Positions 7,089 to 61,952 of a stretch of 64,000 nucleotides of DNA are shown in pieces. Each line of letters starts with the position of its first letter. Position 1 is the stretch's first letter. The translations under genes were made by a program, and so were the position numbers. The stretch is from Eutreptiella sp. 'Long Island Sound 2002' (Eukaryota > Protista > Euglenida). The notes beneath the pieces are model-generated. The model made no database searches. It saw only the letters and a program-made list of their open reading frames with translations, and was not told the DNA's origin. Location: NCBI GenBank assembly GCA_964036045.1, contig OZ038378.1, forward strand, positions 12,524,001 to 12,588,000, read 5' to 3'.

Positions 7089-7427
7089 ATGCCCTGCCTA
7101 AATCGGTTTCAAAAGATGTTTGACATACCTAAAACAAACCATCAGTCAACAAATGAAATCTTATCACACCTATTCGGGCCACTGTTGCCCAAAACACGAA
7201 ATACAGTCACTGCAGACTTTATCGCTGCCGTGATTGTTCACTGTCGATTCGAAGGGGGTGTGGAGGAATTGCGAAAATTACCAGTCCGCACACTTGCTGA
7301 TTCGACACGGTCGTATCTTTTGTTGTTGCAGACAGCTGACATACTAACATTTGGTGTGATTTGCATTGGCTTCGCCAAATTGCTCAGGGCTCTTAAAATG
7401 GAATACCCTCTGAGCAGAGTGTTGTGA
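7089..7427 (+). pseudogene. 5' end of tyrosine recombinase 1 (first duplicate copy), cut by TGA 7425-7427
   Basis: ATG at 7089 (MPCLNRFQKMFD...); the matching codon in the second copy is CGA (9189-9191). Confidence 0.8.
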
Positions 7428-10400
7428 TCCACATTGACACGGGGAATACGGGGAAGAGGTATTTTGTCACAAGAATTCAAAATACCCGTGTTCACACACA
7501 GTGTGACAAATCAAATTCTGGAGTATCTATTTGGGCCATTGATGCCATCCAGGCGGGCATACTGTGCATACTCCGGGTTGCGGTTTATAATTTCACTTGT
7601 GCATTTTTGTAGGTTTGACAATGTCCATGCGATACACAGCATGGATGCTGGAGATTGGATACAAAAATTTCGAGAATACAGTTCTCATTTACAGAAAATA
7701 CCACCACTGATAACAGTGCAGGTGGCACTGACAAAGCTGCTCAGGGTACTCGGGGTCCACTGTCCACGCCCTATTAGACGCGACATACTGGGCAGGGGAT
7801 ATCGAAAAACTTGTATAGATGGTGCATGCCGCACCAAAATGACTGCCGCACTGATATCGTTCGCATCCAGCGATAAACAGATGCTGCGATGTAGTACAGC
7901 ACAATACCAACGCAACATACAAAGCATAGAGACACTCACAGTGAATTTGTCGCGAAAGTTTAATCTATCCTTGCCACACCAACTACTCGACGTCACACCC
8001 CAGCAGATGGTCAAATTCCTTGAAAAAGCAGGTTGTCCCAGTCAGTGTGTAAGAATCTTTGTTCGATTCTACGAGTCTGTAATCGTAGACACTTCCATTG
8101 ACTCAAACGATATACATAAAGCAGCACTACTTGCCAGTACTGCCAGTCCAAGGGGAATATATACAAAAATACTAGCGCTGGTTGCATTGGGCATCGCCTC
8201 TAACTTCAACGTGCACAGTGCGGACGACATGTGTAAGCTGAATGTAGTAGAATTTCGCGAATGGCTGACAGAAAATTGGGGTTACAAAAAATGGATTATG
8301 AGGGCTCTACTTCGAACGCGACAGAAACACATGACCAGCTCACATGGCCTCAATCGTGTTTTCGAATGCCACTGGCCGGATGCTGCTGATCAATGTGACA
8401 TTCGATTTATTTTGCACAAGGCAGTAAGGAAGGGCCACAAAGATCACCAGGTTGCAAAGAATGTGACTGCCTTCCGCTGGATGGCCCGAATGAGAGATGC
8501 AGAGAAATGCGACAGCATTCGAACACTCATTGGCTGGCCAGTCAGCTGTTCCTCCTTTGTATCATTCCTAGCTCGCATGCGTGCCTATGTGTACAGGCAC
8601 ATTCAGACAAGAGCAGCATTTGACGACAACGAGTGTGAAGTTGATCCTTTCCAAAATCTGTATAACACTTTAATGAGCTGGGTACGATCAGGAGTATTTG
8701 AAAAAATACCAGTTACGTGGATTCCGGACAGGACATTAATGCTGCAGGCCACAATGGAGCTACCAGACCTACCAGAGCTATACGCAAGGATACCACCAAA
8801 TCGTGTTCACAGCAAGCAGCGGTACGAACTGACAGATGAAATTGTTGATGCGCTGCCCTGCCTAAATCGGTTTCAAAAGATGTTTGACATACCTAAAACA
8901 AACCATCAGTCAACAAATGAAATCTTATCACACCTATTCGGGCCACTGTTGCCCAAAACACGAAATACAGTCACTGCAGACTTTATCGCTGCCGTGATTG
9001 TTCACTGTCGATTCGAAGGGGGTGTGGAGGAATTGCGAAAATTACCAGTCCGCACACTTGCTGATTCGACACGGTCGTATCTTTTGTTGTTGCAGACAGC
9101 TGACATACCAACATTTGGTGTGATTTGCATTGGCTTCGCCAAATTGCTCAGGGCTCTTAAAATGGAATACCCTCTGAGCAGAGTGTTGCGATCCACATTG
9201 ACACGGGGAATACGGGGAAGAGGTATTTTGTCACAAGAATTCAAAATACCCGTGTTCACACACAGTGTGACAAATCAAATTCTGGAGTATCTATTTGGGC
9301 CATTGATGCCATCCAGGCGGGCATACTGTGCATACTCCGGGTTGCGGTTTATAATTTCACTTGTGCATTTTTGTAGGTTTGACAATGTCCATGCGATACA
9401 CAGCATGGATGCTGGAGATTGGATACAAAAATTTCGAGAATACAGTTCTCATTTACAGAAAATACCACCACTGATAACAGTGCAGGTGGCACTGACAAAG
9501 CTGCTCAGGGTACTCGGGGTCCACTGTCCACGCCCTATTAGACGCGACATACTGGGCAGGGGATATCGAAAAACTTGTATAGATGGTGCATGCCGCACCA
9601 AAATGACTGCCGCACTGATATCGTTCGCATCCAGCGATAAACAGATGCTGCGATGTAGTACAGCACAATACCAACGCAACATACAAAGCATAGAGACACT
9701 CACAGTGAATTTGTCGCGAAAGTTTAATCTATCCTTGCCACACCAACTACTCGACGTCACACCCCAGCAGATGGTCAAATTCCTTGAAAAAGCAGGTTGT
9801 CCCAGTCAGTGTGTAAGAATCCTTGTTCGATTCTACGAGTCTGTAATCGTAGACACTTCCATTGACTCAAACGATATACATAAAGCAGCACTACTTGCCA
9901 GTACTGCCAGTCCAAGGGGAATATATACAAAAATACTAGCGCTGGTTGCATTGGGCATCGCCTCTAACTTCAACGTGCACAGTGCGGACGACATGTGTAA
10001 GCTGAATGTAGTAGAATTTCGCGAATGGCTGACAGAAAATTGGGGTTACAAAAAATGGATTATGAGGGCTCTACTTCGAACGCGACAGAAACACATGACC
10101 AGCTCACATGGCCTCAATCGTGTTTTCGAATGCCACTGGCCGGATGCTGCTGATCAATGTGACATTCGATTTATTTTGCACAAGGCAGTAAGGAAGGGCC
10201 ACAAAGATCACCAGGTTGCAAAGAATGTGACTGCCTTCCGCTGGATGGCCCGAATGAGAGATGCAGAGAAATGCGACAGCATTCGAACACTCATTGGCTG
10301 GCCAGTCAGCTGTTCCTCCTTTGTATCATTCCTAGCTCGCATGCGTGCCTATGTGTACAGGCACATTCAGACAAGAGCAGCATTTGACGACAACGAGTGT

Positions 10401-10619
10401 GAAGTTGATCCTTTCCAAAATCTGTATAACACTTTAATGAGCTGGGTACGATCAGGAGTATTTGAAAAAATACCAGTTACGTGGATTCCGGACAGGACAT
10501 TAATGCTGCAGGCCACAATGGAGCTACCAGACCTACCAGAGCTATACGCAAGGATACCACCAAATCGTGTTCACAGCAAGCAGCGGTACGAACTGACAGA
10601 TGAAATTGTTGATGCGCTG
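7090..10619 (+). repeat. Tandem duplication with a 1764-bp (588-codon) unit inside the recombinase 1 gene
   Basis: 7090..8853 matches 8854..10617 with TG microhomology at the junction; three substitutions found (7345, 7425, 8058). Confidence 0.97.
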
Positions 10620-11306
10620 ACATGTGCATGCAAATCGCCAGAAGAGAAACTGTACATCGAAATAAGTCGTGCAACAGGTCTCAGAGCCAGTGCAATGGCT
10701 AGAATGCAGGTCGCTGACATCTGGGACATACAACAGAGTAGCCCGAAAAAAAGGATCAGGGTATTAGAAAAAAACAAGAAATATCGCATTGTGGAAATGA
10801 GTGATTCACTCAAATCCTGTGTTGAAATCTTTATCGGCGGTACTGAACAATGCAGCACACAATACATATTTGGGCAATTTGCACTGCGTAGGGGACCACA
10901 TGTGACCCGCCGTATACTTTGGAGGCTTTGTGATCGAGTGGGCATAAAAAGAGCATACCACCATGCGTGGAGGAGCTATATAGTCTCCACCTGTGTTAGT
11001 CGCGGCGTTCCGATAGATGTTGTCTCCCGCTGGATTGGCCATGCGTCATCTGAGGTCACAATGAAGTATTACCTTTCCAAGGCACAGACAGACATGGCAA
11101 TACGAAATGCACTACAGCCATCTGACAACAGCAACGGCAACAACAATATAGCCATATCTGGAAACGATGCAATGTGGCAACGGCTCAGAGAAATGAACAC
11201 AGCCTTGGATGAAGCAGAGGCGGAAAATCACAATCTGCGCACAATGCTCACTGACAAAAAAGTAAAATTTACATCCCACCTGGATCCATTCGGCTGGAGG
11301 GATTAA
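7434..11306 (+). CDS. Tyrosine recombinase 1 (subfamily B), long N-terminal region duplicated, C-terminal coiled coil
   Basis: TGLRASA (R), EKNKK (K), HAWR (HxxR), WIGH (H), MKYY (Y); tail LREMNTALDEAEAENHNLRTML. Confidence 0.88.
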   Translation: MTRGIRGRGILSQEFKIPVFTHSVTNQILEYLFGPLMPSRRAYCAYSGLRFIISLVHFCRFDNVHAIHSMDAGDWIQKFREYSSHLQKIPPLITVQVALTKLLRVLGVHCPRPIRRDILGRGYRKTCIDGACRTKMTAALISFASSDKQMLRCSTAQYQRNIQSIETLTVNLSRKFNLSLPHQLLDVTPQQMVKFLEKAGCPSQCVRIFVRFYESVIVDTSIDSNDIHKAALLASTASPRGIYTKILALVALGIASNFNVHSADDMCKLNVVEFREWLTENWGYKKWIMRALLRTRQKHMTSSHGLNRVFECHWPDAADQCDIRFILHKAVRKGHKDHQVAKNVTAFRWMARMRDAEKCDSIRTLIGWPVSCSSFVSFLARMRAYVYRHIQTRAAFDDNECEVDPFQNLYNTLMSWVRSGVFEKIPVTWIPDRTLMLQATMELPDLPELYARIPPNRVHSKQRYELTDEIVDALPCLNRFQKMFDIPKTNHQSTNEILSHLFGPLLPKTRNTVTADFIAAVIVHCRFEGGVEELRKLPVRTLADSTRSYLLLLQTADIPTFGVICIGFAKLLRALKMEYPLSRVLRSTLTRGIRGRGILSQEFKIPVFTHSVTNQILEYLFGPLMPSRRAYCAYSGLRFIISLVHFCRFDNVHAIHSMDAGDWIQKFREYSSHLQKIPPLITVQVALTKLLRVLGVHCPRPIRRDILGRGYRKTCIDGACRTKMTAALISFASSDKQMLRCSTAQYQRNIQSIETLTVNLSRKFNLSLPHQLLDVTPQQMVKFLEKAGCPSQCVRILVRFYESVIVDTSIDSNDIHKAALLASTASPRGIYTKILALVALGIASNFNVHSADDMCKLNVVEFREWLTENWGYKKWIMRALLRTRQKHMTSSHGLNRVFECHWPDAADQCDIRFILHKAVRKGHKDHQVAKNVTAFRWMARMRDAEKCDSIRTLIGWPVSCSSFVSFLARMRAYVYRHIQTRAAFDDNECEVDPFQNLYNTLMSWVRSGVFEKIPVTWIPDRTLMLQATMELPDLPELYARIPPNRVHSKQRYELTDEIVDALTCACKSPEEKLYIEISRATGLRASAMARMQVADIWDIQQSSPKKRIRVLEKNKKYRIVEMSDSLKSCVEIFIGGTEQCSTQYIFGQFALRRGPHVTRRILWRLCDRVGIKRAYHHAWRSYIVSTCVSRGVPIDVVSRWIGHASSEVTMKYYLSKAQTDMAIRNALQPSDNSNGNNNIAISGNDAMWQRLREMNTALDEAEAENHNLRTMLTDKKVKFTSHLDPFGWRD

Positions 11307-13026
11307 TTGTACCTTGATTGCTGCGATTACGAGTATGAACATCAAGAGACATTTTTTCGGCGTTGCTGAGCACATTAGAAGCGTGCATTGCTACCCTCGG
11401 AAACGACGAAACAAATTGCTCTTGTGCAGAAAAGTTGTATGGTTCAGTCATCAGCCTCACAACAGCATTCCAGTCGGTGGGCTTCATCGACTTATCTACA
11501 CCAAGAAAACCCACATGTGCACCAACAACATGAGCCACTTCACTCATCCGGATACGCCCATATACACTTGCAGTCATTCGGCAGTCACTGTGCCCTATCC
11601 ACTTGGCTATTTGCTCAAACGACAGCCCCCTTGCATGCAGCAGATGCACCAACGTATGCCTGAAAGTATGAGGGTGCGCAATGCGATGCGGAATCGATGT
11701 ACGGCTCAATATAGTTTTGACTACCTTCCAGATGGCCGTACGGCTCATGCTACGACGGAGGTCGGAGCCCGGAAATATGTACGCACTTTGCTGAGTTGGT
11801 CTTCTATGCCATCGAAACCACTGCGCGATCAGAACTCGTATGGTCTGACTTAGTGGCGAAATACACCTTTTCTTGCCAAACTTTTCGATGGTATTGGCGC
11901 AATCTGGTACATCAACATGTCGCAACTTGGGCCCCGCTGCCTGCAAGCGACCTACCACATCTACACTGTATGCTAGTCTGCTGAGACCACCTATACGAAG
12001 CCCGAATGACAGCAGGAGCAACACAAAGAGTCGTTCCTGAACAGTATGTGCTGCAAGTATCACCTCCTCCACATGCGACGGATTGAAAGCGAACTGAATG
12101 TCGTCCGTTTCTGATCCATCCACGTGGCACACCCTGATTTGTATTCGCGACAATTCCCGCTGAAGTTTTTCCTTCATATGTAGTCCACTTTCGCACTCAG
12201 TGCCCGACGAGCCAATGGACATATACCCCGTATCCTCCTCATCTGATTCTGTATCCATATCCACAATGGCAAGTGTCGGAATTGGTATATGTGGTGGTTC
12301 ACCATGGCATATGATTGAGTGCATTCGCCGCAAATGGGAGATATCCTTTCGAAATTCAACGAATGATTTTTTGTGGAGGGTAGTTGAGCCATACAGCCGC
12401 AGCCACTGATACGCGGAAAGCTGTTGAATGCGCCCCCACTGTGTATCAAATAGTCCAGCACATGATGCATTGTCTAACAAGGAACAGTAAATACGCTTAA
12501 ATAGCAAGGCTATGCGTTGCATGTTTCCCTTACTGACAGCGGTCAGGACCTGGCGACCAAAAGAGTCCAATGTTTTTGCGAGTAGCAGATACAAAAGACT
12601 GTCGGGATTACGGCGTACAGCAATGGGTATACAATGATGCAGCAACACCTCGCTATATGCTGATTGGTGGCAACGGAATTTGACCCTGGTACCAAGGCGC
12701 AAAGTGGGGTTGATGGCATATGCCAACACCTCAAGTGGTAGGGAGAATAAGGCCCTTGAGAGGTGTGTGCGTACATGTAGTACATGCCTCGATGACCAGC
12801 CGGTCTGCATGTGCCGCCATGCTTCGATCGCGATGGCACAGCTGTTGTTTGAGGTGAACAATGTGTCGGAATGGTCACCACTGCCACCCGCGATCTGATT
12901 GAAAGTCCTCACAAAGACAACAAGATAATGAAGAGCTGTGTCTGCCCTCTTGGTTCCCCAACCCTGTGCAATCATACAGCCATGCACTCTGTCGTATACA
13001 TACTTGGTCCTGATTAATTCACGCAC
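11269..13026 (-). CDS. Tyrosine recombinase 2 (subfamily A)
   Basis: FGLRIGG, EKFGK, AHPHTFRH, WIGH, SVYG; GTG start in the ORF track. Confidence 0.92.
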   Translation of the reverse strand: MRELIRTKYVYDRVHGCMIAQGWGTKRADTALHYLVVFVRTFNQIAGGSGDHSDTLFTSNNSCAIAIEAWRHMQTGWSSRHVLHVRTHLSRALFSLPLEVLAYAINPTLRLGTRVKFRCHQSAYSEVLLHHCIPIAVRRNPDSLLYLLLAKTLDSFGRQVLTAVSKGNMQRIALLFKRIYCSLLDNASCAGLFDTQWGRIQQLSAYQWLRLYGSTTLHKKSFVEFRKDISHLRRMHSIICHGEPPHIPIPTLAIVDMDTESDEEDTGYMSIGSSGTECESGLHMKEKLQRELSRIQIRVCHVDGSETDDIQFAFNPSHVEEVILAAHTVQERLFVLLLLSFGLRIGGLSRLAYSVDVVGRLQAAGPKLRHVDVPDCANTIEKFGKKRCISPLSQTIRVLIAQWFRWHRRPTQQSAYIFPGSDLRRSMSRTAIWKVVKTILSRTSIPHRIAHPHTFRHTLVHLLHARGLSFEQIAKWIGHSDCRMTASVYGRIRMSEVAHVVGAHVGFLGVDKSMKPTDWNAVVRLMTEPYNFSAQEQFVSSFPRVAMHASNVLSNAEKMSLDVHTRNRSNQGTINPSSRMDPGGM

Positions 13027-14627: not shown

Positions 14628-15437
14628 AAACATCAGACCCTCGCCACATCATGCAAGGTGCTGGTCAAGGAATGGTGACTCGGCTGGCCCAGGCTTCCAT
14701 CCTCTCCAGGCACCGGGAGAACCACCCCTGATAGGGATACCAAATGGCGTGTATTGTCTGTCACTGAACAAAACGCCATGCACAACTTCAAGAAATTGTG
14801 CTGTGAGGTCTTTACGTGTTATTGCATACTGTCGAATCATCATGAAGGGCAAATCTGACATGCGTGAATTTTTATGCTCCCGCAGGTATATTGTTACCCA
14901 ATCCGCCACACCCTCCATCAAATTGCTGTACCGTTGAGAATATGGTGTGTCATCTGACAATCCCAGAATATCAAATGCCACAAATCGCGCAATCCCCCAA
15001 TTCGCATGATTTGAATTACTGTTGGCGAGCGCAACCGCAAGGTGAAGCGAGTGCGAGCCACAGATCAACTCACCAATCACGGGGAGACCTGGCGGCAATG
15101 CAGCCCTGAATTGTGATGGTGGTGACATACGTTTGCCATTTTTTGTGTAAAGCGATTCACCATCCCAGATTGCCATAATTCCATCCAATTTCTCTTGTGA
15201 CTTGAAAAGCCTACCATTGTGTCCAATCCAGTTTTCCAAATCTTTTGCATCCCCATACATGGCATTGTCCGCTCTCGGGGCATTCGCATGCAAGCCATCT
15301 GGGGTGGGTGACCATGTGCGCCTATATGGTAGTGGTGGCAGCGTGATGGAGTGACTATTCCGAGCCCTGTCCCTCAATTGCATAAGAACATCCAGACATG
15401 AAATTGCCATTACCACAGACTTTATACACCCATACAT
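14628..15437 (-). pseudogene. ATP-dependent DNA ligase nucleotidyltransferase domain, truncated
   Basis: EKLDGIMAIWDG (motif I), IGELICG (III), AFDI (IIIa); motif IV GEGLMF lies just after the in-frame TGA at 14649-14651; no OB domain follows. Confidence 0.8.
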
Positions 15438-20283: not shown

Positions 20284-20652
20284 TTGCTGTATATGACAAT
20301 TAAAAATATGCTTTCAACCCATTGGGCAATAAACACCGATGCAGAAAATACTACGACAAAACCACCATTTCTCATCATGTATCATCGCACAGATTGCGCA
20401 CTATGTGTCAATCAAAAGGCCAATGTATGGCCAAGGCTGGCGAAGGAGAGTGACGACAGAGGAATTATTCCGATACTATGGGAAGTGTCTGCACAAAAAA
20501 AGCTACCCACTGTTCGTATTACTGCTGTACCGATGTATCACTATGTTTTACCTGATAAGGGGGGTCAAAGTACATATGGCGAGGACACCAAGCTCGAAGT
20601 ATACAAAGCAGACCAGACTGGTAGCCTGCTTGAAAAAATCAAAAATGCCTAA
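20284..20652 (+). CDS. Thioredoxin-fold protein
   Basis: LIMYHRTDCALC (CxxC), WPRLAKE helix and ITAVPMY cis-Pro motif. Confidence 0.7.
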   Translation: MLYMTIKNMLSTHWAINTDAENTTTKPPFLIMYHRTDCALCVNQKANVWPRLAKESDDRGIIPILWEVSAQKKLPTVRITAVPMYHYVLPDKGGQSTYGEDTKLEVYKADQTGSLLEKIKNA

Positions 20653-21196
20653 ACCACCACGCGATAGAAAAATGTGCGCGTTTTGGATCGCGGTGATGAC
20701 GTTGAATTTTGATGATATCCCCTGTCCGAAAACCCATGTACATCGCGATGGGATCTGACCGCAACAATTTTGGCAAGGTGCTTGCCGGCCAGGGACATTC
20801 TTCCCTCGAAATATGTTCATGTGGTGGAACAAGTACATGATCAACTACTCGCATCAGTACAATCCACCACCTGACAATACTTATTCGGCAGCCAATAGGG
20901 ATGTTACGACCAATGTCGTTCTGCGATACTATCTCAATGCACAATTCATCCTGTGTGCCTCCACTGCTGACCTCCCAAATTTCTCGCACATACTGTATTG
21001 GCAGCTTTGGCAAGTTGGACACCGACGTCAGAAGCCGCCTAGACGGTGTATACCACACTGGGGTGGCTGGTATGCAAATTCTTTTTCTCAATATCTTAAC
21101 AACGTCATGGTGTACCATTTGATCATCCAGTCTTATATACTCTATTCCACGTCGCATCAACATATTCTCTGTGGAGCTGACAACCATGGATTGCAT
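20649..21196 (-). CDS. RPB5: RNA polymerase subunit RPB5 homolog with a C-terminal frameshift
   Basis: HVLVPPHEHI, LPKLLRSDPIAMYMGFRTGDIIKIQR; canonical ending (TFFYRVVV*) is in the -1 frame with TAG at 20649-20651. Confidence 0.88.
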
Positions 21197-27318: not shown

Positions 27319-27945
27319 GTGTCACTCAGCACCTGTTGGTCAGGTCCATTGGACGCGGATCGTCAGCAGCAGGTCACATCCAGTGTACCAAAACTTACCC
27401 GCCAGACAGTACTGGGGATGCTGCAACACATGAGTACCACACGAAGGGCTCGCTGCTTGTTGTTGATTCTGTACACCACTACGTTGCGCCGTCGAGCGGT
27501 GGCCAATCTGAGACTACGAGATGTATGGGATAGCTCTTCCGATTCCTGCAAAACTCAATGGGCAGCCCTCGAAAAGTTTAGTGAAACCCGCACTGTGTGG
27601 CCCTGCAAAGATCTGCGGCAGAGCATTGAGGATTTCGTGCGAAAAGATTACGACCATTCTTGCGAATATCTTTTTGGCGATTCGCGACGGCCTGCACAGA
27701 GACCAAATAACAGGGTCCGCTACATTTTACAACGCGTCTGTCAACTACAAGGTTTACCAAAATTTCATGCCCATCAATTTCGGTCCCTGATGGTCGACAT
27801 TTTCATTGAACAGGGAAATTCCATGGAAAAGGCCTGCAAGTTTCTGGGTCATAAAAATGTTTCCACAACATACAGACACTATTACACTCCGAATGTTGAT
27901 GAGCTGGCACAAAATATCCAATTTCTCGAGGCTTGTGGAAAATGA
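27319..27945 (+). CDS. Tyrosine recombinase 3 (catalytic domain only, subfamily B-like)
   Basis: TTLRRRAVANLRLRDVWD, EKFSE, HAHQFR, FLGH, YRHYY. Confidence 0.88.
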   Translation: MSLSTCWSGPLDADRQQQVTSSVPKLTRQTVLGMLQHMSTTRRARCLLLILYTTTLRRRAVANLRLRDVWDSSSDSCKTQWAALEKFSETRTVWPCKDLRQSIEDFVRKDYDHSCEYLFGDSRRPAQRPNNRVRYILQRVCQLQGLPKFHAHQFRSLMVDIFIEQGNSMEKACKFLGHKNVSTTYRHYYTPNVDELAQNIQFLEACGK

Positions 27946-36602: not shown

Positions 36603-36618
36603 GCATTATCATTTGCTG
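36603..36618 (+). repeat. Left target-site duplication GCATTATCATTTGCTG
   Basis: Identical 16-mer at 37900..37915. Confidence 0.92.
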
Positions 36619-37899: not shown

Positions 37900-37915
37900 G
37901 CATTATCATTTGCTG
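37900..37915 (+). repeat. Right target-site duplication
   Basis: Identical to 36603..36618. Confidence 0.92.
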
Positions 37916-45638: not shown

Positions 45639-47231
45639 ATGAAATTTCTATGTCAGAAAAGCAAACAATTTTTGACAAGTATGTTAGTAGAGAACGGTGG
45701 ACCCATCAACACCAAAAACTACTTGAATGACGTCAGGCGTGGAATTCTGCTTACTGGTGTAAAATGTCACACGGATGTCACCCTGCTGCAAGTGGATGAG
45801 CTCAAAGTCCTCGTTTCCCCACACAAATATCCACACCGAGCACGAAAAGCGATAAACGCTCTGGTATCTGCTTGTGGTTGTACAGCACTCATTATCCCAC
45901 AGCAAACACAGAGCGCGTACAGCAAGGCGGAAAAGGCATGGCTGAGTCAGCAAAGTTTGCATCGCGCGGACTTCTACGTCAGGGAGAGGAGCCACCTGCT
46001 TTGTGAACTGAAAAAACGCCGTGGTTACCTTGCGCAATCCACACTGTGTGACATTAGCAGCAAAATGTTTCGTATACTGATGTGTGTACATCCATCGGAC
46101 AAAGACAACATAAATGCAGGACACTTCGTGGAGTATGTAACTGCTTTGGTTGTACAGTCCACACAGCAAAATTCAGTGCTGATGCACCGTGGCAGCCGAA
46201 GAAAAGTCCCATATAGACTCAGCGAACAGCAGGACATGATAGCAAAATTCATGGATGCTGCAAACTTCATCATGAATGTATGGGACATCCGACAAACACA
46301 GCCAACACACAAGTCATCTCACAGGATGGTAGCACGCCAGGTCACACAGAAACTTGACAGTATGCAGAAGCACAAAGAAGGTTTCAGGCCCATATTGGAT
46401 CGCCTTACAATGCAGGAGATGGATGATTCCACACAAGGAGCACATCAAAAGCCACGCCTGCAACTGATGCTGTTTCTCATGAGTCGACTTGCCATGCGTG
46501 TTGGTGCCCTTCTTAATTTGCGCTTAGTGGCCTTGGTGCATGGTTTTGATGACCCGGAAGCACTAAAATACGACGCACAATGGAAAGTCAGGTCATTCAT
46601 ACGGTCATGGGACAAGTGTTACCAGATGAACGAATGGTCGACTGTGCATGTACGTCACCAATTGGAGACGTACATCAATACAATCTGGAGACCACAACAT
46701 GAAATATGGGTGTCGAATACAAATGACGGAAAGATAGTACTCAAAAACGGATATCTTTTTCCTGCGCGTGCAGGAAAAAGCCACACTGAGAAGCACATGT
46801 GCACATCCACAGTGTGCCAGGAGGTAAGATCGCATCTCCTACAGATGGGAATTGACAGTGGACGGGCACACTGCCACGCATTCCGCAAGGGTGTGATTAC
46901 GCACCTCCTGAAAATAGGGAACCAGATTGATCGAGTTGCCCGTTTTGCTCATCACAGGAGTGCACTTACAACGGAACGAAGCTATGACAATCGCACAGAT
47001 GATGAGGTGGTCAATAGCCTGATCATACCACATCAATGGAGTGACAGCAACACGAAAAACAACAACCCGAGTATACCAGAGCACATTGATGACAGCCAAT
47101 GCACCGAGGTACAACTTGAACTGGCAACTGACACGGTTATACAATTAACGGAGGAGAGGAACACACTTCAAAAACGTTTGCATGATGCCATGTCCATGTT
47201 GACCGATGAGCAAAAATATCAGCTTTCATAA
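45639..47231 (+). CDS. Tyrosine recombinase 6 (divergent)
   Basis: LAMRVGALLNL, WDK, AHCHAFRK, FAHH, ERSYD, C-terminal coiled coil. Confidence 0.85.
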   Translation: MKFLCQKSKQFLTSMLVENGGPINTKNYLNDVRRGILLTGVKCHTDVTLLQVDELKVLVSPHKYPHRARKAINALVSACGCTALIIPQQTQSAYSKAEKAWLSQQSLHRADFYVRERSHLLCELKKRRGYLAQSTLCDISSKMFRILMCVHPSDKDNINAGHFVEYVTALVVQSTQQNSVLMHRGSRRKVPYRLSEQQDMIAKFMDAANFIMNVWDIRQTQPTHKSSHRMVARQVTQKLDSMQKHKEGFRPILDRLTMQEMDDSTQGAHQKPRLQLMLFLMSRLAMRVGALLNLRLVALVHGFDDPEALKYDAQWKVRSFIRSWDKCYQMNEWSTVHVRHQLETYINTIWRPQHEIWVSNTNDGKIVLKNGYLFPARAGKSHTEKHMCTSTVCQEVRSHLLQMGIDSGRAHCHAFRKGVITHLLKIGNQIDRVARFAHHRSALTTERSYDNRTDDEVVNSLIIPHQWSDSNTKNNNPSIPEHIDDSQCTEVQLELATDTVIQLTEERNTLQKRLHDAMSMLTDEQKYQLS

Positions 47232-54665: not shown

Positions 54666-55328
54666 GGTATCAGGGTGCTGTCAACAATGTAGTATCAGGG
54701 TGGTATCAGCGTGCTGTCAACAATGTGGTATCAGGGTGGTATCAGGGTGCTGTCAACTCGGGGTGCTGTCAACAATGTGGTATCAGGGTGGTATCAGGGT
54801 GCTGTCAACAATGTGGTATCAGGGTGGTATCAGGGTGCTGTCAACTCAGGGTGCTGTCAACAATGTGGTATCAGGGTGGTATCAGGGTGCTGTCAACAAT
54901 GTGGTATCAGGGTGGTATCAGGGTGCTGTCAACAATGTGGTATCAGGGTGGTATCAGGGTGCTGTCAACAATGTGGTATCAGGGTGGTATCAGGGTGCTG
55001 TCAACAATGTGGTATCAGGGTGGTATCAGGGTGCTGTCAACAATGTAGTATCAGGGTGGTATCAGGGTGCTGTCAACAATGTGGTATCAGGGTGGTATCA
55101 GGGTGCTGTCAACAATGTAGTATCAGGGTGGTATCAGGGTGCTGTCAACAATGTGGTATCAGGGTGGTATCAGGGTGCTGTCAACAATGTAGTATCAGGG
55201 TGCTGTCAACAATGTGGTATCAGGGTGGTATCAGGGTGCTGTCAACAATGTAGTATCAGGGTGGTATCAGGGTGCTGTCAACAATGTAGTATCAGGGTGC
55301 TGTCAACAATGTAGTATCAGGGTGGTAT
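54666..55328 (+). repeat. Modular minisatellite, main unit 36 bp (TGCTGTCAACAATG + 2x TGGTATCAGGG), ~18 units
   Basis: Direct reading; 12-aa periodicity in all three frames; variants drop or truncate modules. Confidence 0.97.
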
Positions 55329-56315: not shown

Positions 56316-56317
56316 AA

Positions 56318-59300
56318 ATTGCGCACACTGGGAACCTTAGTGACACTGTGTATTTTTTCTGAGCCAAAAGGGTATAGGGGTGTGTATTTGTGCTGACCGT
56401 GCGCAACATTGCAATATTGCGCACACTGGGAACCTTAGTGACAATGTGTATTTTTTCTGAGCCAAAAGGGTATAGGGGTGTGTATTTGTGCTGACCGTGC
56501 GCAACATTGCAATATTGCGCACACTGGGAACCTCAGTGACACTGTGTATTTTTTCTGAGCCAAAAGGGTATAGGGGTGTGTATTTGTGCTGACCGTGCGC
56601 AACATTGCAATATTGCGCACACTGGGAACCTTAGTGACACTGTGTATTTTTTCTGAGCCAAAAGGGTATAGGGGTGTGTATTTGTGCTGACCGTGCGCAA
56701 CATTGCAATATTGCGCACACTGGGAACCTTAGTGACACTGTGTATTTTTTCTGAGCCAAAAGGGTATAGGGGTGTGTATTTGTGATGACCGTGCGCAACA
56801 TTGCAATATTGCGCACACTGGGAACCTTAGTGACACTGTGTATTTTTTTTTAGCCAAAAGGGTATAGGGGTGTGTATTTGTGATGACCGTGCGCAACATT
56901 GCAATATTGCGCACACTGGGAACCTTAGTGACACTGTGTATTTTTTCTGAGCCAAAAGGGTATAGGGGTGTGTATTTGTGATGACCGTGCGCAACATTGC
57001 AACATTGCGCACACTGGGAACCTTAGTGACACTGTGTATTTTTTCTGAGCCAAAAGGGTATAGGGGTGTGTATTTGTGCTGACCGTGCGCAACATTGCAA
57101 TATTGCGCACACTGGGAACCTTAGTGACACTGTGTATTTTTTCTGAGCCAAAAGGGTATAGGGGTGTGTATTTGTGCTGACCGTGCGCAACATTGCAATA
57201 TTGCGCACACTGGGAACCTTAGTGACACTGTGTATTTTTTTTGAGCCAAAAGGGTATAGGGGTGTGTATTTGTGCTGACCGTGCGCAACATTGCAATATT
57301 GCGCACACTGGGAACCTTAGTGACACTGTGTATTTTTTCTGAGCCAAAAGGGTATAGGGGTGTGTATTTGTGCTGACCGTGCGCAACATTGCAATATTGC
57401 GCACACTGGGAACCTTAGTGACACTGTGTATTTTGTTTGAGCCAAAAGGGTATAGGGGTGTGTATTTGTGCTGACCGTGCGCAACATTGCAATATTGCGC
57501 ACACTGGGAACCTTAGTGACACTGTGTATTTTTTTTGAGCCAAAAGGGTATAGGGGTGTGTATTTGTGCTGACCGTGCGCAACATTGCAATATTGCGCAC
57601 ACTGGGAACCTTAGTGACACTGTGTATTTTTTTTGAGCCAAAAGGGTATAGGGGTGTGTATTTGTGCTGACCGTGCGCAACATTGCAATATTGCGCACAC
57701 TGGGAACCTTAGTGACACTGTGTATTTTTTCTGAGCCAAAAGGGTATAGGGGTGTGTATTTGTGCTGACCGTGCGCAACATTGCAATATTGCGCACACTG
57801 GGAACCTTAGTGACACTGTGTATTTTTTCTGAGCCAAAAGGGTATAGGGGTGTGTATTTGTGCTGACCGTGCGCAACATTGCAATATTGCGCACACTGGG
57901 AACCTTAGTCACACTGTGTATTTGTTCTGAGCCAAAAGGGTATAGGGGTGTGTATTTGTGCTGACCGTGCGCAACATTGCAATATTGCGCACACTGGGAA
58001 CCTTAGTGACACTGTGTATTTTATTCTGAGCCAAAAGGGTATAGGGGTGTGTATTTGTGATGACCGTGCGCAACATTGCAATATTGCGCACACTGGGAAC
58101 CTTAGTGACACTGTGTATTTTTTTTGAGCCAAAAGGGTATAGGGGTGTGTATTTGTGCTGACCGTGCGCAACATTGCAATATTGCGCACACTGGGAACCT
58201 CAGTGACACTGTGTATTTTTTCTGAGCCAAAAGGGTATAGGGGTGTGTATTTGTGCTGACCGTGCGCAACATTGCAATATTGCGCACACTGGGAACCTCA
58301 GTGACACTGTGTATTTTTTCTGAGCCAAAAGGGTATAGGGGTGTGTATTTGTGCTGACCGTGCGCAACATTGCAATATTGCGCACACTGGGAACCTTAGT
58401 GACACTGTGTATTTTTTCTGAGCCAAAAGGGTATAGGGGTGTGTATTTGTGATGACCGTGCGCAACATTGCAATATTGCGCACACTGGGAACCTTAGTGA
58501 CACTGTGTATTTTTTTTGAGCCAAAAGGGTATAGGGGTGTGTATTTGTGATGACCGTGCGCAACATTGCAATATTGCGCACACTGGGAACCTTAGTGACA
58601 CTGTGTATTTTTTTTGAGCCAAAAGGGTATAGGGGTGTGTATTTGTGATGACCGTGCGCAACATTGCAATATTGCGCACACTGGGAACCTTAGTGACACT
58701 GTGTATTTTTTCTGAGCCAAAAGGGTATAGGGGTGTGTATTTGTGCTGACCGTGCGCAACATTGCAATATTGCGCACACTGGGAACCTTAGTGACACTGT
58801 GTATTTTTTCTGAGCCAAAAGGGTATAGGGGTGTGTATTTGTGCTGACCGTGCGCAACATTGCAATATTGCGCACACTGGGAACCTTAGTGACACTGTGT
58901 ATTTTTTTTGAGCCAAAAGGGTATAGGGGTGTGTATTTGTGCTGACCGTGCGCAACATTGCAATATTGCGCACACTGGGAACCTTAGTGACACTGTGTAT
59001 TTTTTCTGAGCCAAAAGGGTATAGGGGTGTGTATTTGTGCTGACCGTGCGCAACATTGCAATATTGCGCACACTGGGAACCTTAGTGACACTGTGTATTT
59101 TTTTTGAGCCAAAAGGGTATAGGGGTGTGTATTTGTGCTGACTGTGCGCAACATTGCAATATTGCGCACACTGGGAACCTTAGTGACACTGTGTATTTTT
59201 TTTTAGCCAAAAGGGTATAGGGGTGTGTATTTGTGCTGACCGTGCGCAACATTGCAATATTGCGCACACTGGGAACCTTAGTGACACTGTGTATTTTTTT

Positions 59301-59985
59301 TGAGCCAAAAGGGTATAGGGGTGTGTATTTGTGCTGACCGTGCGCAACATTGCAATATTGCGCACACTGGGAACCTTAGTGACACTGTGTATTTTTTCTG
59401 AGCCAAAAGGGTATAGGGGTGTGTATTTGTGCTGACCGTGCGCAACATTGCAATATTGCGCACACTGGGAACCTTAGTGACACTGTGTATTTTTTCTGAG
59501 CCAAAAGGGTATAGGGGTGTGTATTTGTGCTGACCGTGCGCAACATTGCAATATTGCGCACACTGGGAACCTTAGTGACACTGTGTATTTTTTCTGAGCC
59601 AAAAGGGTATAGGGGTGTGTACTTGTGCTGACCGTGCGCAACATTGCAATATTGCGCACACTGGGAACCTTAGTGACACTGTGTATTTTTTTCTGAGCCA
59701 AAAGGGTATAGGGGTGTGTATTTGTGATGACCGTGCGCAACATTGCAATATTGCGCACACTGGGAACCTTAGTGACACTGTGTATTTTTTTTGAGCCAAA
59801 AGGGTATAGGGGTGTGTATTTGTGCTGACCGTGCGCAACATTGCAATATTGCGCACACTGAAAACCTTAGTGACACTGTGTATTTTTTTTGAGCCAAAAG
59901 GGTATAGGGGTGTGTATTTGTGCTGACCGTGCGCAACATTGCAATATTGCGCACACTGGGAACCTTAGTGACACTGTGTATTTTT
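56318..59985. repeat. Tandem array of ~37 x 98-bp units, each with a 26-bp imperfect palindrome
   Basis: Unit ACTGGGAACCTTAGTGACACTGTGTATTTTTTCTGAGCCAAAAGGGTATAGGGGTGTGTATTTGTGCTGACCGTGCGCAACATTGCAATATTGCGCAC; ORF track repeats every 98 bp. Confidence 0.99.
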
Positions 59986-60155
59986 AAAGGGGAAAGGATC
60001 GATTCAGCAAAAAAAAAGATTCGGGCAAATCGCCTATAGCAGGAGACGCCCATACCATAACCTCGGCATGGACATATGCTAGACATACAGGCCGGTTATA
60101 TGGCATTGGGTATATATCAGGAGAAATATTTATAAAAAAAACCTGGGTCGGCAAC

Positions 60156-61952
60156 TCATTGCTCGAGTAACGAATCAATTCTGTTTTTTATATCCTGCAT
60201 AGCTGCGTGAAATGCGCTCTTTTCATTGTGCGATGTGTACATTGCACTGGCGTCTCTTTTGAGTAGATCCCAGTCACTCACTTCAAATACAAAAGGTGCC
60301 GCTAAATATGATGCAAGCTTCTTCCATTTGGACGCGTCATTCCTGTGTGTATTTGGAATGAATGGTACGTTGCTGATTAGTCCTGCAATGTCATCATGTC
60401 TTAGTCGACCGTATGTGTGTGTAGTTACCGCTGGTGTTGCATGTCCTACGAATTTGCTTATACCTTCCCACGTTACCCCATTCATGAATAGCATCTGGAT
60501 GACTGTATGACGAAATGTATGTGGATGGGCATGTGGTAGGTGCAGTATACCACAACGATTAAAAATATTGCGACATATGGTACTGATGTAGCCAGTACCC
60601 ACTGAGTCCATATTGTCAGATGTAAATTGACATTTCGCTGGAAAGATGTAGGAGCGGGAACCTTGTGGCCTCCGACGTCCTGTCTCTCTGTACCAGTGTG
60701 TAAGCAAAATGCGGCAGGTCTGTGTCAGTGCAACCCGCTGTATGTGGTTGTTTTTTTCTGTTGTCCACAGAAAACGAGGTGGCTGTTGGTGGTCTGTGTT
60801 GTCGTTGACGCCATCATTATCTTTGCACCACTGTAGTCGACATATTCCTCCAATACGTAGTCCTGTTGTCAGAAAGAGCATCAGAACTAATCTCTCCAGT
60901 GTGGTGTTTGTGCAGCTCACCATGCGGTGTACTTCCTCTGACGAGAAAGAGTATACACGTTCATGTGACGGAATATCTTCACCAATTGCTTCATGACACC
61001 ATCGACCCTGTATTTGTGCAATCACCGTTTTTTTGTCTGCACTGGTTTCGAAGGAATGACACTCTGATGCCGCAGCATCATCACAGATCAGGGAATGCTG
61101 TTTCAGTCTATTTGTTGGTATTTTGGGCCCTGGTCCCCTCAAGATTGCAGTATGTAGTATACCGAGATATCGCATGTGCCGCTGTATGTGTTCAATTGAC
61201 ACACGATAGTTTCTTTTTGTCATCATCGAATTATAAGAAGCTAGGATGTCCAGTGATGATATATTTCGGAGTGCAGTCCATGTTATTGAGTGGTCGCCAT
61301 GGTCACATGCCGGAATGCCCCTCTCTTCAGGACAATGAGTGAGAACAGAGTTGTAGAAACACAAGACGGACTGTAATGTCTTTTTTGATACTCTTTTGAG
61401 TGTACATATCAACTCTTCAGCTATTTCGCATATGATATCATACCATGTTGTTGTTCTACGTACTCGGATTGGTATGCAGCAGTGTAACAAAAATTTGTTG
61501 TTAGCAGATGATTTGGTCAGAATTGATATACAGGAACCGGGTCGCAAAAGTGGACATATGCCATACGCGATTTCAGTCAGGCCGAGTGCCACAAGAGCCC
61601 TGCACAGTCTGCTGCGAGTGACGCGTGACCATTTACGGGACCAATTGTGTCTGGTGCAGAGTGAATTCCATGCTTCGCAAGCCGTTTCCCGGTTGAGGGA
61701 ACGAAGAATCTCTTCGTCTGTTCGGTGGTGCTTTCCAGGGCCAGCCTCACCTTCTGCGCACAACACAAATTCGTTGATGAGACGAATAAGATTCGTTATA
61801 CGCCGTTTTTTTGTAAAAATCTTTGCTGCAGAGAGTGTTTTCTCTAACCGTTTTTGCCAATCTGTACAGGGGTGTGCTGGTCTGGGTATATACAGGGTCA
61901 TTTGACATACTGGACCCTTTGACATCTTAGGCATAAAAGGAAACGTCCACAA
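60156..61952 (-). CDS. Tyrosine recombinase 7 (subfamily A)
   Basis: TGLRIGG, EKNN, AHPHTFRH, FVGH, HTYG. Confidence 0.92.
   Translation of the reverse strand: MWTFPFMPKMSKGPVCQMTLYIPRPAHPCTDWQKRLEKTLSAAKIFTKKRRITNLIRLINEFVLCAEGEAGPGKHHRTDEEILRSLNRETACEAWNSLCTRHNWSRKWSRVTRSRLCRALVALGLTEIAYGICPLLRPGSCISILTKSSANNKFLLHCCIPIRVRRTTTWYDIICEIAEELICTLKRVSKKTLQSVLCFYNSVLTHCPEERGIPACDHGDHSITWTALRNISSLDILASYNSMMTKRNYRVSIEHIQRHMRYLGILHTAILRGPGPKIPTNRLKQHSLICDDAAASECHSFETSADKKTVIAQIQGRWCHEAIGEDIPSHERVYSFSSEEVHRMVSCTNTTLERLVLMLFLTTGLRIGGICRLQWCKDNDGVNDNTDHQQPPRFLWTTEKNNHIQRVALTQTCRILLTHWYRETGRRRPQGSRSYIFPAKCQFTSDNMDSVGTGYISTICRNIFNRCGILHLPHAHPHTFRHTVIQMLFMNGVTWEGISKFVGHATPAVTTHTYGRLRHDDIAGLISNVPFIPNTHRNDASKWKKLASYLAAPFVFEVSDWDLLKRDASAMYTSHNEKSAFHAAMQDIKNRIDSLLEQ

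What the first reader, a model, noticed from the sequence alone, without database searches (positions are those of the whole stretch)
7089..61952. Seven catalytically intact tyrosine recombinases in two subfamilies within 55 kb of giant-virus DNA
Seen: seven ORFs (7434+, 11269-, 27319+, 30900-, 32819+, 45639+, 60156-) each have R...K...HxxR...H...Y. Subfamily A (YR2, YR5, YR7; ~590 aa) shares GLRIGG, AHPH(T/S)FRH, a terminal YG and N-terminal motifs (W..H/W.RV...L.RAL, LH(H/C)C(I/L)P). Subfamily B (YR1, YR4, YR3) shares LR.(S/E/R)A, D(I/V)(W/Y)D or GVYD, EK and a charged C-terminal tail. YR6 is an outlier. Knowledge: viruses usually carry one or two integrases or resolvases. Inference: an expanded, possibly undescribed recombinase family that could handle integration, concatemer resolution or genome shuffling. 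The catalytic residues survive while the ligase and RPB5 are damaged.
Basis: partly seen in the sequence, partly recalled or inferred. Interest (0 to 1): 0.9.

Follow-up and report, generated by a model that had tools for sequence, protein, structure and literature searches.

The report
Paired Xer-like recombinase genes in giant-virus DNA
A stretch of uncultured giant-virus-like DNA carries eight tyrosine recombinase genes, six of them as three neighbouring pairs of two unnamed families (A+B); the pairing recurs in distant relatives, which points to a two-subunit DNA-rearranging enzyme I found no description of for viruses of eukaryotes.

Summary
All seven ORFs score above Pfam's threshold for the tyrosine recombinase domain and keep R-K-HxxR-H-Y. 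An eighth gene starts at 62769 and runs off the window.

Family A (about 590 aa) and family B (about 635 aa or longer) lie side by side three times here (YR1+YR2, YR4+YR5, YR7+YR8). They are also adjacent in five other contexts, four of them unrelated metagenome contigs, one of which carries viral RNA polymerase genes. A and B share only the catalytic domain, which is closest to archaeal XerA and bacterial XerC/D but far below those families' cut-offs. Partner distances co-vary (Mantel r 0.69, 2 of 5040 permutations). Four paired genes show pN/pS 0.30 against a 96-97% identical sister contig.

Not all seven genes are intact. YR1 has one in-frame stop and one internal tandem duplication. YR3 is a catalytic-domain remnant that the sister contig lacks. 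YR6 is a solo orphan. I found no ligase, and RPB5 shows no evident damage.

Best reading: heteromeric A+B site-specific recombinases, duplicated as units and long resident in this virus lineage. Their target sites and biological role are not known. This is a new variant of a known kind, of moderate to high interest.

The parts
6963..11306 (+). YR1, long family-B tyrosine recombinase gene. It is broken: one in-frame stop and one in-frame internal tandem duplication of 1,764 bp. It is convergent with YR2, and the two ORFs overlap by 38 bp.
   Evidence: PF00589 54 bits at the C-terminus. 24% identity to YR4 over 421 aa. Duplication. One internal stop in the frame. Catalytic residues present.
11269..13026 (-). 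YR2, family-A tyrosine recombinase and partner of YR1. It is full length; the 591-aa orthologue in the sister contig is 99% identical.
27319..27945 (+). YR3, a solo family-B remnant consisting of the catalytic domain only (208 aa) with no N-terminal region. It lies in a segment of about 1.5 kb that is replaced by 34 nt of unrelated sequence in the sister contig.
   Evidence: PF00589 56.9 bits. Not called as one gene. Strain comparison. 42% identical to the L083 B protein over 179 aa.
30900..32807 (-). YR4, family-B tyrosine recombinase (635 aa), divergent partner of YR5.
   Evidence: AlphaFold2 model pLDDT 86.8. The fold matches XerA, Cre and IntI4 over 320-390 columns. pN/pS 0.24 against the sister contig.
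32819..34606 (+). YR5, family-A tyrosine recombinase. The called gene starts at the ATG at 32870 (578 aa). It is head to head with YR4, with an intergenic spacer of about 60 bp.
   Evidence: pN/pS 0.40.
45639..47231 (+). YR6, a solo orphan tyrosine recombinase (530 aa). Only the catalytic domain resembles A and B, and the N-terminal 265 aa are unique. It is conserved at 96-99% in two sister contigs.
   Evidence: PF00589 31.6 bits. hhalign to B 2.2e-11 and to A 1.8e-07, catalytic columns only. No relatives outside its own cluster. Orthologues.
60156..61952 (-). YR7, family-A tyrosine recombinase. The called gene is 592 aa, starting from the ATG at 61934. It is the divergent partner of YR8, with one ORF between them.
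   Evidence: Model pLDDT 73.7. Fold matches XerA, XerH and Cre. pN/pS 0.26.
61978..62721 (+). 247-aa ORF lying between YR7 and YR8. It has no Pfam hit and no detectable likeness to the ORFs found between A and B in other pairs.
62769..64000 (+). YR8, family-B tyrosine recombinase (636 aa in full). Only its first 410 codons lie in the window.
   Evidence: Full gene at L003 10792-12702 with PF00589. 25% identity to YR4 over 597 aa. 37% to the B partner in L085. pN/pS 0.29.
56318..59985 (.). Tandem array of 98-bp units (37 copies) ending 170 bp from the 3' end of YR7. Each unit holds a 26-bp near-palindrome (8-bp inverted arms around 10 bp). Its relation to the recombinases is unknown, and it is listed only as a neighbour.
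   Evidence: 51 units at the same place in the sister contig. The motif does not occur next to the other pairs.
20639..21196 (-). RPB5-like RNA polymerase subunit gene (185 aa). It is the only virus or eukaryote hallmark found in the window and is listed as context.
   Evidence: PF01191 39.6 bits. Orthologue of 182 aa.

Best explanation
The window holds three copies of a two-gene module. One gene encodes a family-A and the other a family-B Xer-like tyrosine recombinase. The window also holds one solo orphan recombinase (YR6) and one decayed B remnant (YR3).

Shown:
- A and B are distinct families that share only the catalytic domain.
- Each has the two-domain clamp fold of Xer/Cre recombinases plus its own extra helical N-terminal region.
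- Both keep all catalytic residues.
- They are neighbours in eight contexts: five in the sample's own virus lineage or its sister contigs, and three in four unrelated metagenome contigs of 51-68% G+C plus one contig without DNA on hand.
- Partners co-diverge.
- The paired genes are under purifying selection.
- They sit at the same places in three 96-99% identical sister contigs.

Inferred: A and B act together as a heteromeric site-specific recombinase, in the way XerC and XerD do. Each subunit would bind one half of an asymmetric site and exchange one pair of strands. The module was duplicated as a unit long ago, so each pair probably serves its own site. The pairs look like long-resident genes of this giant-virus lineage rather than recently active transposons.

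Not determined: what the reaction achieves. Resolution of replication products, inversion or excision within the variable ORFan-rich region, and integration of the genome are all open.
For: - Domain and residues.
- A/B adjacency: window pairs; L005 with B 937 aa and A 617 aa; the contig of P0004; L083/L084; L085; L088-L090. Family assignment of the partners was by BLASTP.
- Co-divergence: the A of L085 is closest to YR7 (38%) and its B is closest to YR8 (37%); L088 shows the same pattern. A neighbouring gene X is also shared. Mantel r 0.69, with 2 of 5040 permutations as high.
- Selection: pooled pN/pS of YR4, YR5, YR7 and YR8 is 0.30 (42 non-synonymous, 41 synonymous changes; binomial p 9e-8 against neutrality), compared with 0.55 for eight neighbours (Fisher p 0.03).
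- Conservation in sister contigs.
- Xer-like nature: PDB profile hits to XerA 4a8e (5.8e-19 for A, 3.9e-23 for B) and to XerD. Foldseek top hits are XerA, XerH, Cre, IntI4 and the Tn1549 integrase, across both domains. In NCBIfam the best hits of all eight genes are XerA, XerC or XerD.
- A and B share only 182 catalytic columns, as expected if they recognise different half-sites.
- No near-identical paralogues and no terminal repeats around the pairs.
Against: - No recombination site has been identified, and the intergenic spacers of the pairs share no motif.
- Physical interaction of A and B was not tested. Adjacency and co-divergence would also fit two recombinases acting separately on one switch, as FimB and FimE do.
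- The Mantel signal rests largely on the YR7/YR8-L085-L088 clade and on only seven pairs.
- Substitution counts for pN/pS are small.
- One pair has a broken member (YR1). Pair orientation is not uniform: one pair is convergent, and three have an unrelated ORF between the partners.
- The window's contig shows several shortened genes and a retroelement nearby, so this copy may be a decaying or integrated one in which the recombinases need not still act.
Confidence: 0.55

Rival explanations
1. Each A+B pair is the recombinase module of a separate integrative mobile element that parasitises giant-virus genomes, analogous to Tn554-type elements with two tyrosine recombinases. The window would then be a graveyard or hotspot of several independent insertions.
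For: Tyrosine recombinases are typical of mobile elements. The region is almost wholly ORFans and is rich in insertions and deletions between sister contigs, with at least six in 22 kb. A B remnant (YR3) is present in one contig and absent in another. L083 packs four recombinase genes into 8 kb. The gene X next to the YR7/YR8-type pair travels with it in three viruses, which could mean a larger shared element.
Against: Paralogous pairs are only 24-30% identical, so there are no recent copies. No inverted or direct terminal repeats flank the pairs. YR2, YR4, YR5, YR6, YR7 and YR8 have orthologues in the sister contigs, and for YR4/YR5 and YR7/YR8 the DNA is collinear. The YR3 difference has unrelated filler at the junction, which looks like an ordinary deletion rather than clean site-specific excision. 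The families are rare: 15 A relatives in 5.8 billion proteins.
Confidence: 0.25
2. The recombinases serve integration of the whole giant-virus genome into a host chromosome, as proposed for the single integrase of phaeoviruses. The window's 1.3-Mb contig would itself be such an integrated, decaying copy.
For: Several genes are shorter here than in two sister contigs that agree with each other. One 818-aa gene in the sister contig appears as three ORFs here. A 1632-aa reverse transcriptase/RNase H/integrase ORF lies just where synteny with the sister contig ends. Read depth is 43x here against 71-75x for the sister contigs, judging by the contig names.
Against: No virus-host junction was seen. 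Coding density is about 82% with no sign of host genes in the 85 kb inspected. One integration function does not explain three or more ancient, divergent pairs. The sister contigs, which look less damaged, carry the same pairs.
Confidence: 0.12
3. The pairs are relics without present function. The ORFs stay open only because the copies are young relative to the sister contigs.
For: YR1 is broken and YR3 is a remnant. Divergence between sister contigs is low (dS 0.01-0.04), so open frames over that span mean little on their own.
Against: Orthologous pairs at 29-38% identity in other viruses still have full-length ORFs and all catalytic residues. The ratio of non-synonymous to synonymous change is far below neutral.
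Confidence: 0.05

Closest known systems
XerC/XerD of bacteria, and the single XerA of archaea
   Same: XerA, XerC and XerD are the closest catalytic-domain relatives by sequence profile and by fold. Both systems use a two-domain clamp (core-binding plus catalytic) and keep the full R-K-H-R-H-Y set. As with XerC/XerD, there are two distinct paralogues, which suggests a heterotetramer on an asymmetric site.
   Different: Scores are 28-62 bits against family cut-offs of 220-335. An extra, family-specific helical N-terminal region makes the proteins twice as long. The genes are adjacent, there are several divergent pairs per genome, and the setting is giant-virus-like DNA of eukaryotes. No dif-like site and no FtsK-like partner are known.
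Bacterial elements with two or three tyrosine recombinase genes (Tn554 TnpA/TnpB, 'recombinase in trio' elements). This comparison is from my own knowledge.
   Same: Adjacent, divergent tyrosine recombinase genes are inherited as a unit.
   Different: No sequence relationship was detected beyond the shared superfamily. No element ends or target duplications were found. No named hit to these proteins came back from NCBIfam.
FimB/FimE-type invertase pairs (my own knowledge)
   Same: Two neighbouring tyrosine recombinase genes lie next to the DNA they might invert. Between two relatives (L085, L088) a segment holding the B gene is inverted, with one end in the A-B spacer.
   Different: FimB and FimE are close paralogues of about 200 aa that act separately. 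Here the partners belong to different families. The inversion seen is between distant viruses and has only a TA-rich 13-14-nt match at its ends.
Eukaryotic tyrosine-recombinase elements (Crypton, DIRS, Ngaro, Starship 'captains'), and the tyrosine-recombinase gene clusters of up to 50 kb reported in Amoebidium (PMC11244446)
   Same: These are tyrosine recombinases in eukaryote-associated DNA. The Amoebidium clusters are likewise intron-poor, multi-gene and without close named relatives.
   Different: Those elements carry one recombinase each. No Pfam domain other than PF00589 was found in A or B, and 37 of 39 B members show nothing else. There is no reverse transcriptase within the pairs. The Amoebidium sequences were not on hand, so no direct comparison was made.
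Single integrases of other large DNA viruses (phaeovirus integrase, entomopoxvirus and lymphocystis virus Tyr recombinases, virophage and polinton-like virus integrases)
   Same: They share the superfamily. Entomopoxvirus and lymphocystis disease virus 4 proteins appear among the fold matches.
   Different: Those matches are weak (E about 1e-4, 300-500 columns) and rank below phage integrases. They are single genes without the A or B N-terminal regions. No phaeovirus protein came back as a hit, so that likeness is untested.

Membership tests
Tyrosine recombinase superfamily (Pfam PF00589 / DNA breaking-rejoining fold) | Significant match to the catalytic-domain profile | tested here: met
   All seven ORFs score 31.6-58.7 bits against a cut-off of 27.1. 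YR8 is covered by the precomputed hit. 37 of 39 family-B members match.
Tyrosine recombinase superfamily (Pfam PF00589 / DNA breaking-rejoining fold) | Catalytic residues Arg, Lys, His-x-x-Arg, His/Trp and the Tyr nucleophile | tested here: met
   Present in all eight window genes and in the partners from L005, L083 and L085. They are invariant or nearly invariant columns in A1 and A2.
Tyrosine recombinase superfamily (Pfam PF00589 / DNA breaking-rejoining fold) | Two-domain clamp: helical core-binding domain plus catalytic domain | tested here: met
   Foldseek aligns 320-390 columns of the A and B models to full-length XerA, XerH, Cre, IntI4 and Tn1549 Int. YR3 lacks the first domain.
XerC / XerD / XerA (NCBIfam equivalogs TIGR02224, TIGR02225, NF040815) | Score above the curated family cut-off | tested here: not met
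   These are the best hits of all eight genes, but they score 28-62 bits against cut-offs of 220-335.
XerC / XerD / XerA (NCBIfam equivalogs TIGR02224, TIGR02225, NF040815) | Protein of about 260-300 aa with no extra domains, acting at a dif site of a cellular chromosome | tested here: not met
   The proteins are 530-940 aa with family-specific N-terminal regions. No dif-like site was found. The setting is not a cellular chromosome of a prokaryote.
Heteromeric two-recombinase system (works like XerC/XerD) | Two distinct paralogues that co-occur | tested here: met
   A and B are adjacent in eight contexts. Partner distances correlate.
Heteromeric two-recombinase system (works like XerC/XerD) | Physical A-B complex on an asymmetric site, each subunit exchanging one strand pair | not testable with these tools
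   No complex prediction tool was available and no site has been identified.
Mobile element with tyrosine recombinases (Crypton, Tn554-like, integrative element) | Defined ends (repeats or target duplications) and presence/absence between related genomes | tested here: not met
   No flanking repeats. Paired genes have orthologues in the sister contigs, collinear where DNA was compared. Only the YR3 remnant differs, and its junction is untidy.
Mobile element with tyrosine recombinases (Crypton, Tn554-like, integrative element) | Multiple recent copies in a genome | tested here: not met
   Paralogues within the window are 24-30% identical. The rest of the 1.3-Mb contig could not be read.
DIRS-type retroelement | Tyrosine recombinase linked to reverse transcriptase and RNase H in one element | tested here: not met
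   No RT domain lies in or next to any of the eight genes. The RT ORF beyond the window carries an rve integrase and lies 7 kb from YR8.
Telomere resolvase (protelomerase) | Named hit to TelK/ResT-type proteins or their domains | tested here: not met
   None among the Pfam, PDB sequence or fold hits.
Nucleocytoviricota (giant virus) genome as the setting | Hallmark genes (capsid, DNA polymerase B, packaging ATPase, RNA polymerase subunits, etc.) | tested here: inconclusive
   In the window only RPB5 was found. A relative's contig with an A+B pair has Rpb1, TFIIS, ERCC4 and a UvrD helicase. L005 has a poly(A) polymerase. The sequence is dense and intron-free, about 82% coding, and nearly all ORFans. 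Capsid and polymerase genes were not seen, because only about 130 kb of the contigs could be read.

The most novel reading that the evidence does not exclude
The A+B pairs are heterotetrameric recombinases that a lineage of giant viruses uses for programmed rearrangement of its own genome. Each ancient pair would have its own site, driving inversion, excision or integration of segments within the ORFan-rich variable region. This would be a site-specific recombination system native to giant viruses and a mechanism for their genomic islands.
Probability: 0.2. Interest if true: 0.85.

Novelty: new variant of a known kind. Interest (0 to 1): 0.62.

Why it matters
Giant viruses have mosaic, fast-changing genome regions whose mechanism of change is poorly understood. 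A recent survey of their genomic islands names transposases but no recombinases (PMC13620141).

A conserved two-subunit recombinase module, kept in several ancient copies and under selection, is a concrete candidate for such a mechanism, or for integration or genome resolution. It would also be the first Xer-like heteromeric pair I am aware of in eukaryote-associated viral DNA. My searches of the held literature found none described.

Families A and B add two unnamed architectures to the tyrosine recombinase superfamily, each with a sizeable N-terminal region of unknown role.

Tried and rejected
- Terminal repeats around the pairs: only short matches that look like chance.
- A shared motif in the A-B spacers: none seen by eye.
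- The 26-bp near-palindrome of the 98-bp array as a candidate site: it occurs only inside the array and not near the other pairs or in relatives. The link is unsupported.
- The ORFs lying between or beside the partners (247, 206, 250 aa) as a conserved third gene: no similarity among them and no Pfam hits.
- The 532-aa ORF after YR6 as a degenerate partner: hhalign probability 0.2%.
- IMG/VR scans for A and B: only phage-type catalytic-domain matches for A and nothing for B. The full B alignment was too divergent to seed a scan.
- JGI metagenomes: two short true A contigs only.
- GTDB genomes: catalytic-domain matches only.
- Word-seeded searches with YR4 and YR6 found only their own clusters. 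The exhaustive phmmer search was needed to find family B.
- Two exact-protein look-ups failed because the called starts differ.
- L005 and L006 turned out to be the same sequence (99.5%), so they gave no extra comparison.
- Crypton, DIRS, Starship and telomere-resolvase readings were rejected for lack of any named hit.
- The taxon of the virus could not be set with the tools at hand.

Full report

Searches printed coordinates or sequence around that duplication and around a strain-specific deletion. This report gives only counts and outer bounds for broken genes. No repaired, joined or consensus sequence was built.

**1. The observation**

All seven ORFs hit the tyrosine recombinase catalytic domain (PF00589) above Pfam's gathering score: 31.6-58.7 bits against 27.1. 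In a MAFFT alignment of the catalytic regions, every one keeps the first Arg, the Lys of the beta-hairpin, His-x-x-Arg, the second His and the Tyr nucleophile.

- YR2, YR5 and YR7 are 28-30% identical over 450-510 aa.
- YR1 and YR4 are 24% identical over 421 aa.
- YR3 matches that group over its catalytic domain only.
- YR6 is an outlier. Only its catalytic domain aligns to either family profile.

Four corrections are needed:
- An eighth recombinase starts at 62769 and runs off the window. It is B-type, 636 aa, and read in full in L003.
- The YR1 gene (6963-11306) has one in-frame stop and one in-frame tandem duplication of 1,764 bp, whose two copies are about 99.4% identical.
- YR3 is a 208-aa catalytic domain without the family's N-terminal part, and the gene caller did not call it as one gene.
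- No ligase was found in any ORF scanned or in the precomputed Pfam hits. RPB5 (185 aa) is 99% identical over 176 aa to a 182-aa orthologue, so damage is not evident.

**2. Where the window comes from**

Exact-protein look-ups place the window at about 773.9-837.9 kb of a 1,305,775-bp linear contig of an ENA metagenome assembly, ERZ25074135 ctg10506, with 43x in its name.

Features of the sequence:
- The window is about 82% coding with ATG-started ORFs on both strands, short spacers and no tRNA genes.
- About 50 ORFs were scanned against Pfam, and precomputed hits cover the rest of the called genes. Beyond the recombinases, only a glycosyltransferase (29559-30617) and RPB5 have hits above Pfam's thresholds.
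- The same sample holds sister contigs of 605, 311, 351 and 591 kb, at 71-75x for the two with depth in the name. They are 96-99% identical and collinear with the window apart from many insertions and deletions.
- A distant relative's contig that also carries an A+B pair encodes Rpb1, TFIIS, an ERCC4 nuclease and a UvrD-type helicase. Another stretch of the sister contig encodes a poly(A) polymerase.

This fits a giant virus of the Nucleocytoviricota kind. However, capsid and DNA polymerase genes were not seen, so the assignment stays probable rather than shown.

Several genes are shorter here than in two sister contigs that agree with each other: 417 vs 733/738 aa, 262 vs 306, 162 vs 232/237 and 679 vs 745. 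One 818-aa gene is three ORFs here. A reverse transcriptase/RNase H/rve ORF lies where synteny with the sister contig ends, about 7 kb past the window. This copy may therefore be a decaying or integrated one. That question is open.

**3.

The recombinases come as neighbouring A+B pairs. In the window:

| Pair | Members | Arrangement |
|---|---|---|
| 1 | YR1 (B) + YR2 (A) | convergent, ORFs overlap by 38 bp |
| 2 | YR4 (B) + YR5 (A) | head to head |
| 3 | YR7 (A) + YR8 (B) | divergent, with a 247-aa ORF between |

Elsewhere:

| Context | B partner | A partner | Notes |
|---|---|---|---|
| Sister contig, about 150 kb from the YR7/YR8 orthologues (L005) | 937 aa | 617 aa | a 206-aa ORF lies between |
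| 36-kb contig of another sample | 502-aa recombinase | 594 aa | no DNA on hand, so the partner's family is unchecked |
| L083/L084 | 747 aa | 647 aa | two further recombinases of 488 and 484 aa; 67.5% G+C |
| L085 | 662 aa | 594 aa | |
| L088-L090 | 602 aa | 571 aa | a 374-aa ORF lies between |

**4. What A and B are**

Family A (alignment A1, 14 sequences):
- The catalytic residues are invariant or nearly invariant.
- Only 15 relatives turned up among 5.8 billion cluster representatives, and 'integrase' or 'hypothetical protein' are the only names given.

Family B:
- It was found only by exhaustive phmmer: 715 representatives at E<=1e-3 and 86 at E<=1e-10. About 60 align from roughly residue 120-180 through the catalytic domain.
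- All of those looked up come from Logan, ENA or JGI assemblies without accession or name.
- Pfam sees nothing but PF00589 in 37 of 39 members.

Both families:
- The profiles hit archaeal XerA (4a8e: 5.8e-19 for A, 3.9e-23 for B), then XerA 5hxy and XerD.
- In NCBIfam, all eight window genes have XerA, XerC or XerD as best hits, but at 28-62 bits against cut-offs of 220-335.
- AlphaFold2 models (A: pLDDT 73.7; B: 86.8, pTM 0.75) match full-length XerA, XerH, Cre, IntI4 and the Tn1549 integrase over 320-390 columns. That span covers the core-binding and catalytic domains, and a further helical N-terminal region is left unmatched.
- Against predicted viral structures, the best matches are phage integrases. 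A few poxvirus and iridovirus recombinases rank lower.
- A and B are homologous only over 182 catalytic columns (hhalign 2.4e-28).
- Neither family turned up in IMG/VR.
- A scan of 185,579 prokaryotic species genomes found only catalytic-domain matches of 22-40% identity.

**5. Are the pairs units?**

- The A of L085 is closest to YR7 (38%), and its B is closest to YR8 (37% over 620 aa). L088 behaves likewise.
- A neighbouring gene X is shared by all three. It is 731 aa in L085, split as 276 + 374 aa in L088, and only a 157-aa C-terminal homologue lies next to YR8.
- Over seven pairs, the A and B distance matrices correlate (Mantel r 0.69). Only 2 of all 5040 permutations reach that value. Most of the signal comes from the YR7/YR8-type clade.
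- Paralogous pairs within the virus are only 24-30% identical, so the duplications are ancient.

**6. Are they maintained?**

- YR2, YR4, YR5, YR6, YR7 and YR8 have full-length orthologues at 96-99.5% identity in the sister contigs.
- Against the 605-kb contig, YR4, YR5, YR7 and YR8 together show 42 non-synonymous and 41 synonymous differences. That gives pN/pS 0.30, with p 9e-8 against neutrality.
- Eight neighbouring genes give pN/pS 0.55 (Fisher p 0.03). The counts are small.
- Full-length ORFs and intact catalytic residues in relatives at about 30-38% identity are the stronger argument.

**7. Are they mobile?**

- No terminal inverted or direct repeats flank the pairs, and no recent copies exist.
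- For YR4/YR5 and YR7/YR8, the DNA is collinear with the sister contig.
- Only the YR3 remnant differs. The segment of about 1.5 kb that holds it is replaced by 34 nt of unrelated sequence in the sister contig, which looks like an ordinary deletion.
- I therefore rank 'resident paired recombinases' above 'independent transposon insertions', but I do not exclude the latter.

**8. Mechanism**

Shown:
- Two distinct families with complete active sites and clamp folds.
- Conserved adjacency, co-divergence and purifying selection.

Inferred:
- A heterotetramer of A and B on an asymmetric site, as for XerC/XerD, with each pair having its own site.

Unknown:
- The sites and the outcome of the reaction.

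One lead concerns an inversion. Between L085 and L088, the segment holding the C-terminal half of X and the B gene is inverted. One end lies in the A-B spacer and the other inside X, where L085 has a 13-14-nt TA-rich inverted match. This is a difference between distant viruses and may be ordinary rearrangement at promoter-like TA tracts.

A second lead is the 98-bp tandem array next to YR7. It has 37 units here and 51 in the sister contig, and each unit contains a 26-bp near-palindrome. The motif is found nowhere else in the loci held, so a link to the recombinases is unsupported.

**9. Comparison and novelty**

- The system most likely works like XerC/XerD, but it fails the membership tests for XerA, XerC and XerD on score and architecture.
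- It is not a DIRS, Crypton, Starship or telomere-resolvase relative by any named hit.
- Four full-text searches found no description of paired or expanded tyrosine recombinases in giant viruses.
- The nearest published observation is the clusters of tyrosine recombinase genes of up to 50 kb, without close named relatives, in Amoebidium (PMC11244446). I could not compare those sequences.
- Verdict: a new variant of a known kind, namely two unnamed recombinase families forming a conserved two-gene module in giant-virus-like DNA. Interest 0.62.

Noticed in passing
window 56318-59985: Tandem array of 37 units of 98 bp (98% matches), ending 170 bp from the 3' end of YR7. Each unit has a 26-bp near-palindrome with 8-bp arms around 10 bp. 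The sister contig has 51 units at the same place, so copy number varies between strains.
   Followed up: partly
window 54666-55299: A second array of 36-bp units, about 17 copies (83% matches), lying inside overlapping ORFs. It is also present, in diverged form, in the sister contig.
   Followed up: no
L003 17078-20744 (about 5-9 kb beyond the window's end): An 833-aa ORF without Pfam hits is followed by a 1632-aa ORF with reverse transcriptase, RNase H and rve integrase domains. They sit exactly where collinearity with the 605-kb sister contig stops. A retroelement in or beside giant-virus-like DNA would be unusual and bears on whether this contig is an integrated copy.
   Followed up: partly
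window 222-1475, 14649-15437, 18940-19428, 36201-40001, 52095-54134: These genes are shorter here than their 97-99% identical orthologues in two sister contigs (417 vs 733/738 aa, 262 vs 306, 162 vs 232/237, 679 vs 745). One 818-aa gene is three ORFs here. That makes five genes shortened or split, besides YR1, which suggests this copy is decaying while the paired recombinases stay whole.
   Followed up: partly
window 36616-37900: A G+C-rich stretch of about 1.3 kb (53% in the surrounding 4 kb against 45% elsewhere) with a 212-bp unit repeated 1.9 times. It is absent from the sister contig and lies within the gene that is split here.
   Followed up: no
window 42559-42585: Four and a half copies of ACCCTA, a (CCCTAA)n telomere-like repeat, near the 3' end of the 475-aa ORF at 41208-42635.
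   Followed up: no
L085 691-6869 compared with L088 9184-14718: The segment holding the C-terminal half of neighbour gene X plus the B recombinase gene is inverted between these two relatives. One end lies in the A-B spacer and the other inside X, where L085 has a short TA-rich inverted match.
   Followed up: partly
L083 4122-12312: A 67.5% G+C relative packs four recombinase genes into 8 kb: B 747 aa, A 647 aa, and a tandem pair of 488 and 484 aa. The last two are about 33% identical to each other and belong to neither A nor B.
   Followed up: partly
window 29559-30617: A glycosyltransferase (Caps_synth, 80.9 bits) lies next to YR4. It is one of the very few annotatable genes in the window and is conserved in the sister contigs.
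   Followed up: no
L087 18840-20638 compared with window about 21985: The sister contig has about 1.8 kb, with three small ORFs, that the window lacks. Together with at least five other insertions or deletions in 22 kb, this marks the region as highly variable between strains.
   Followed up: no
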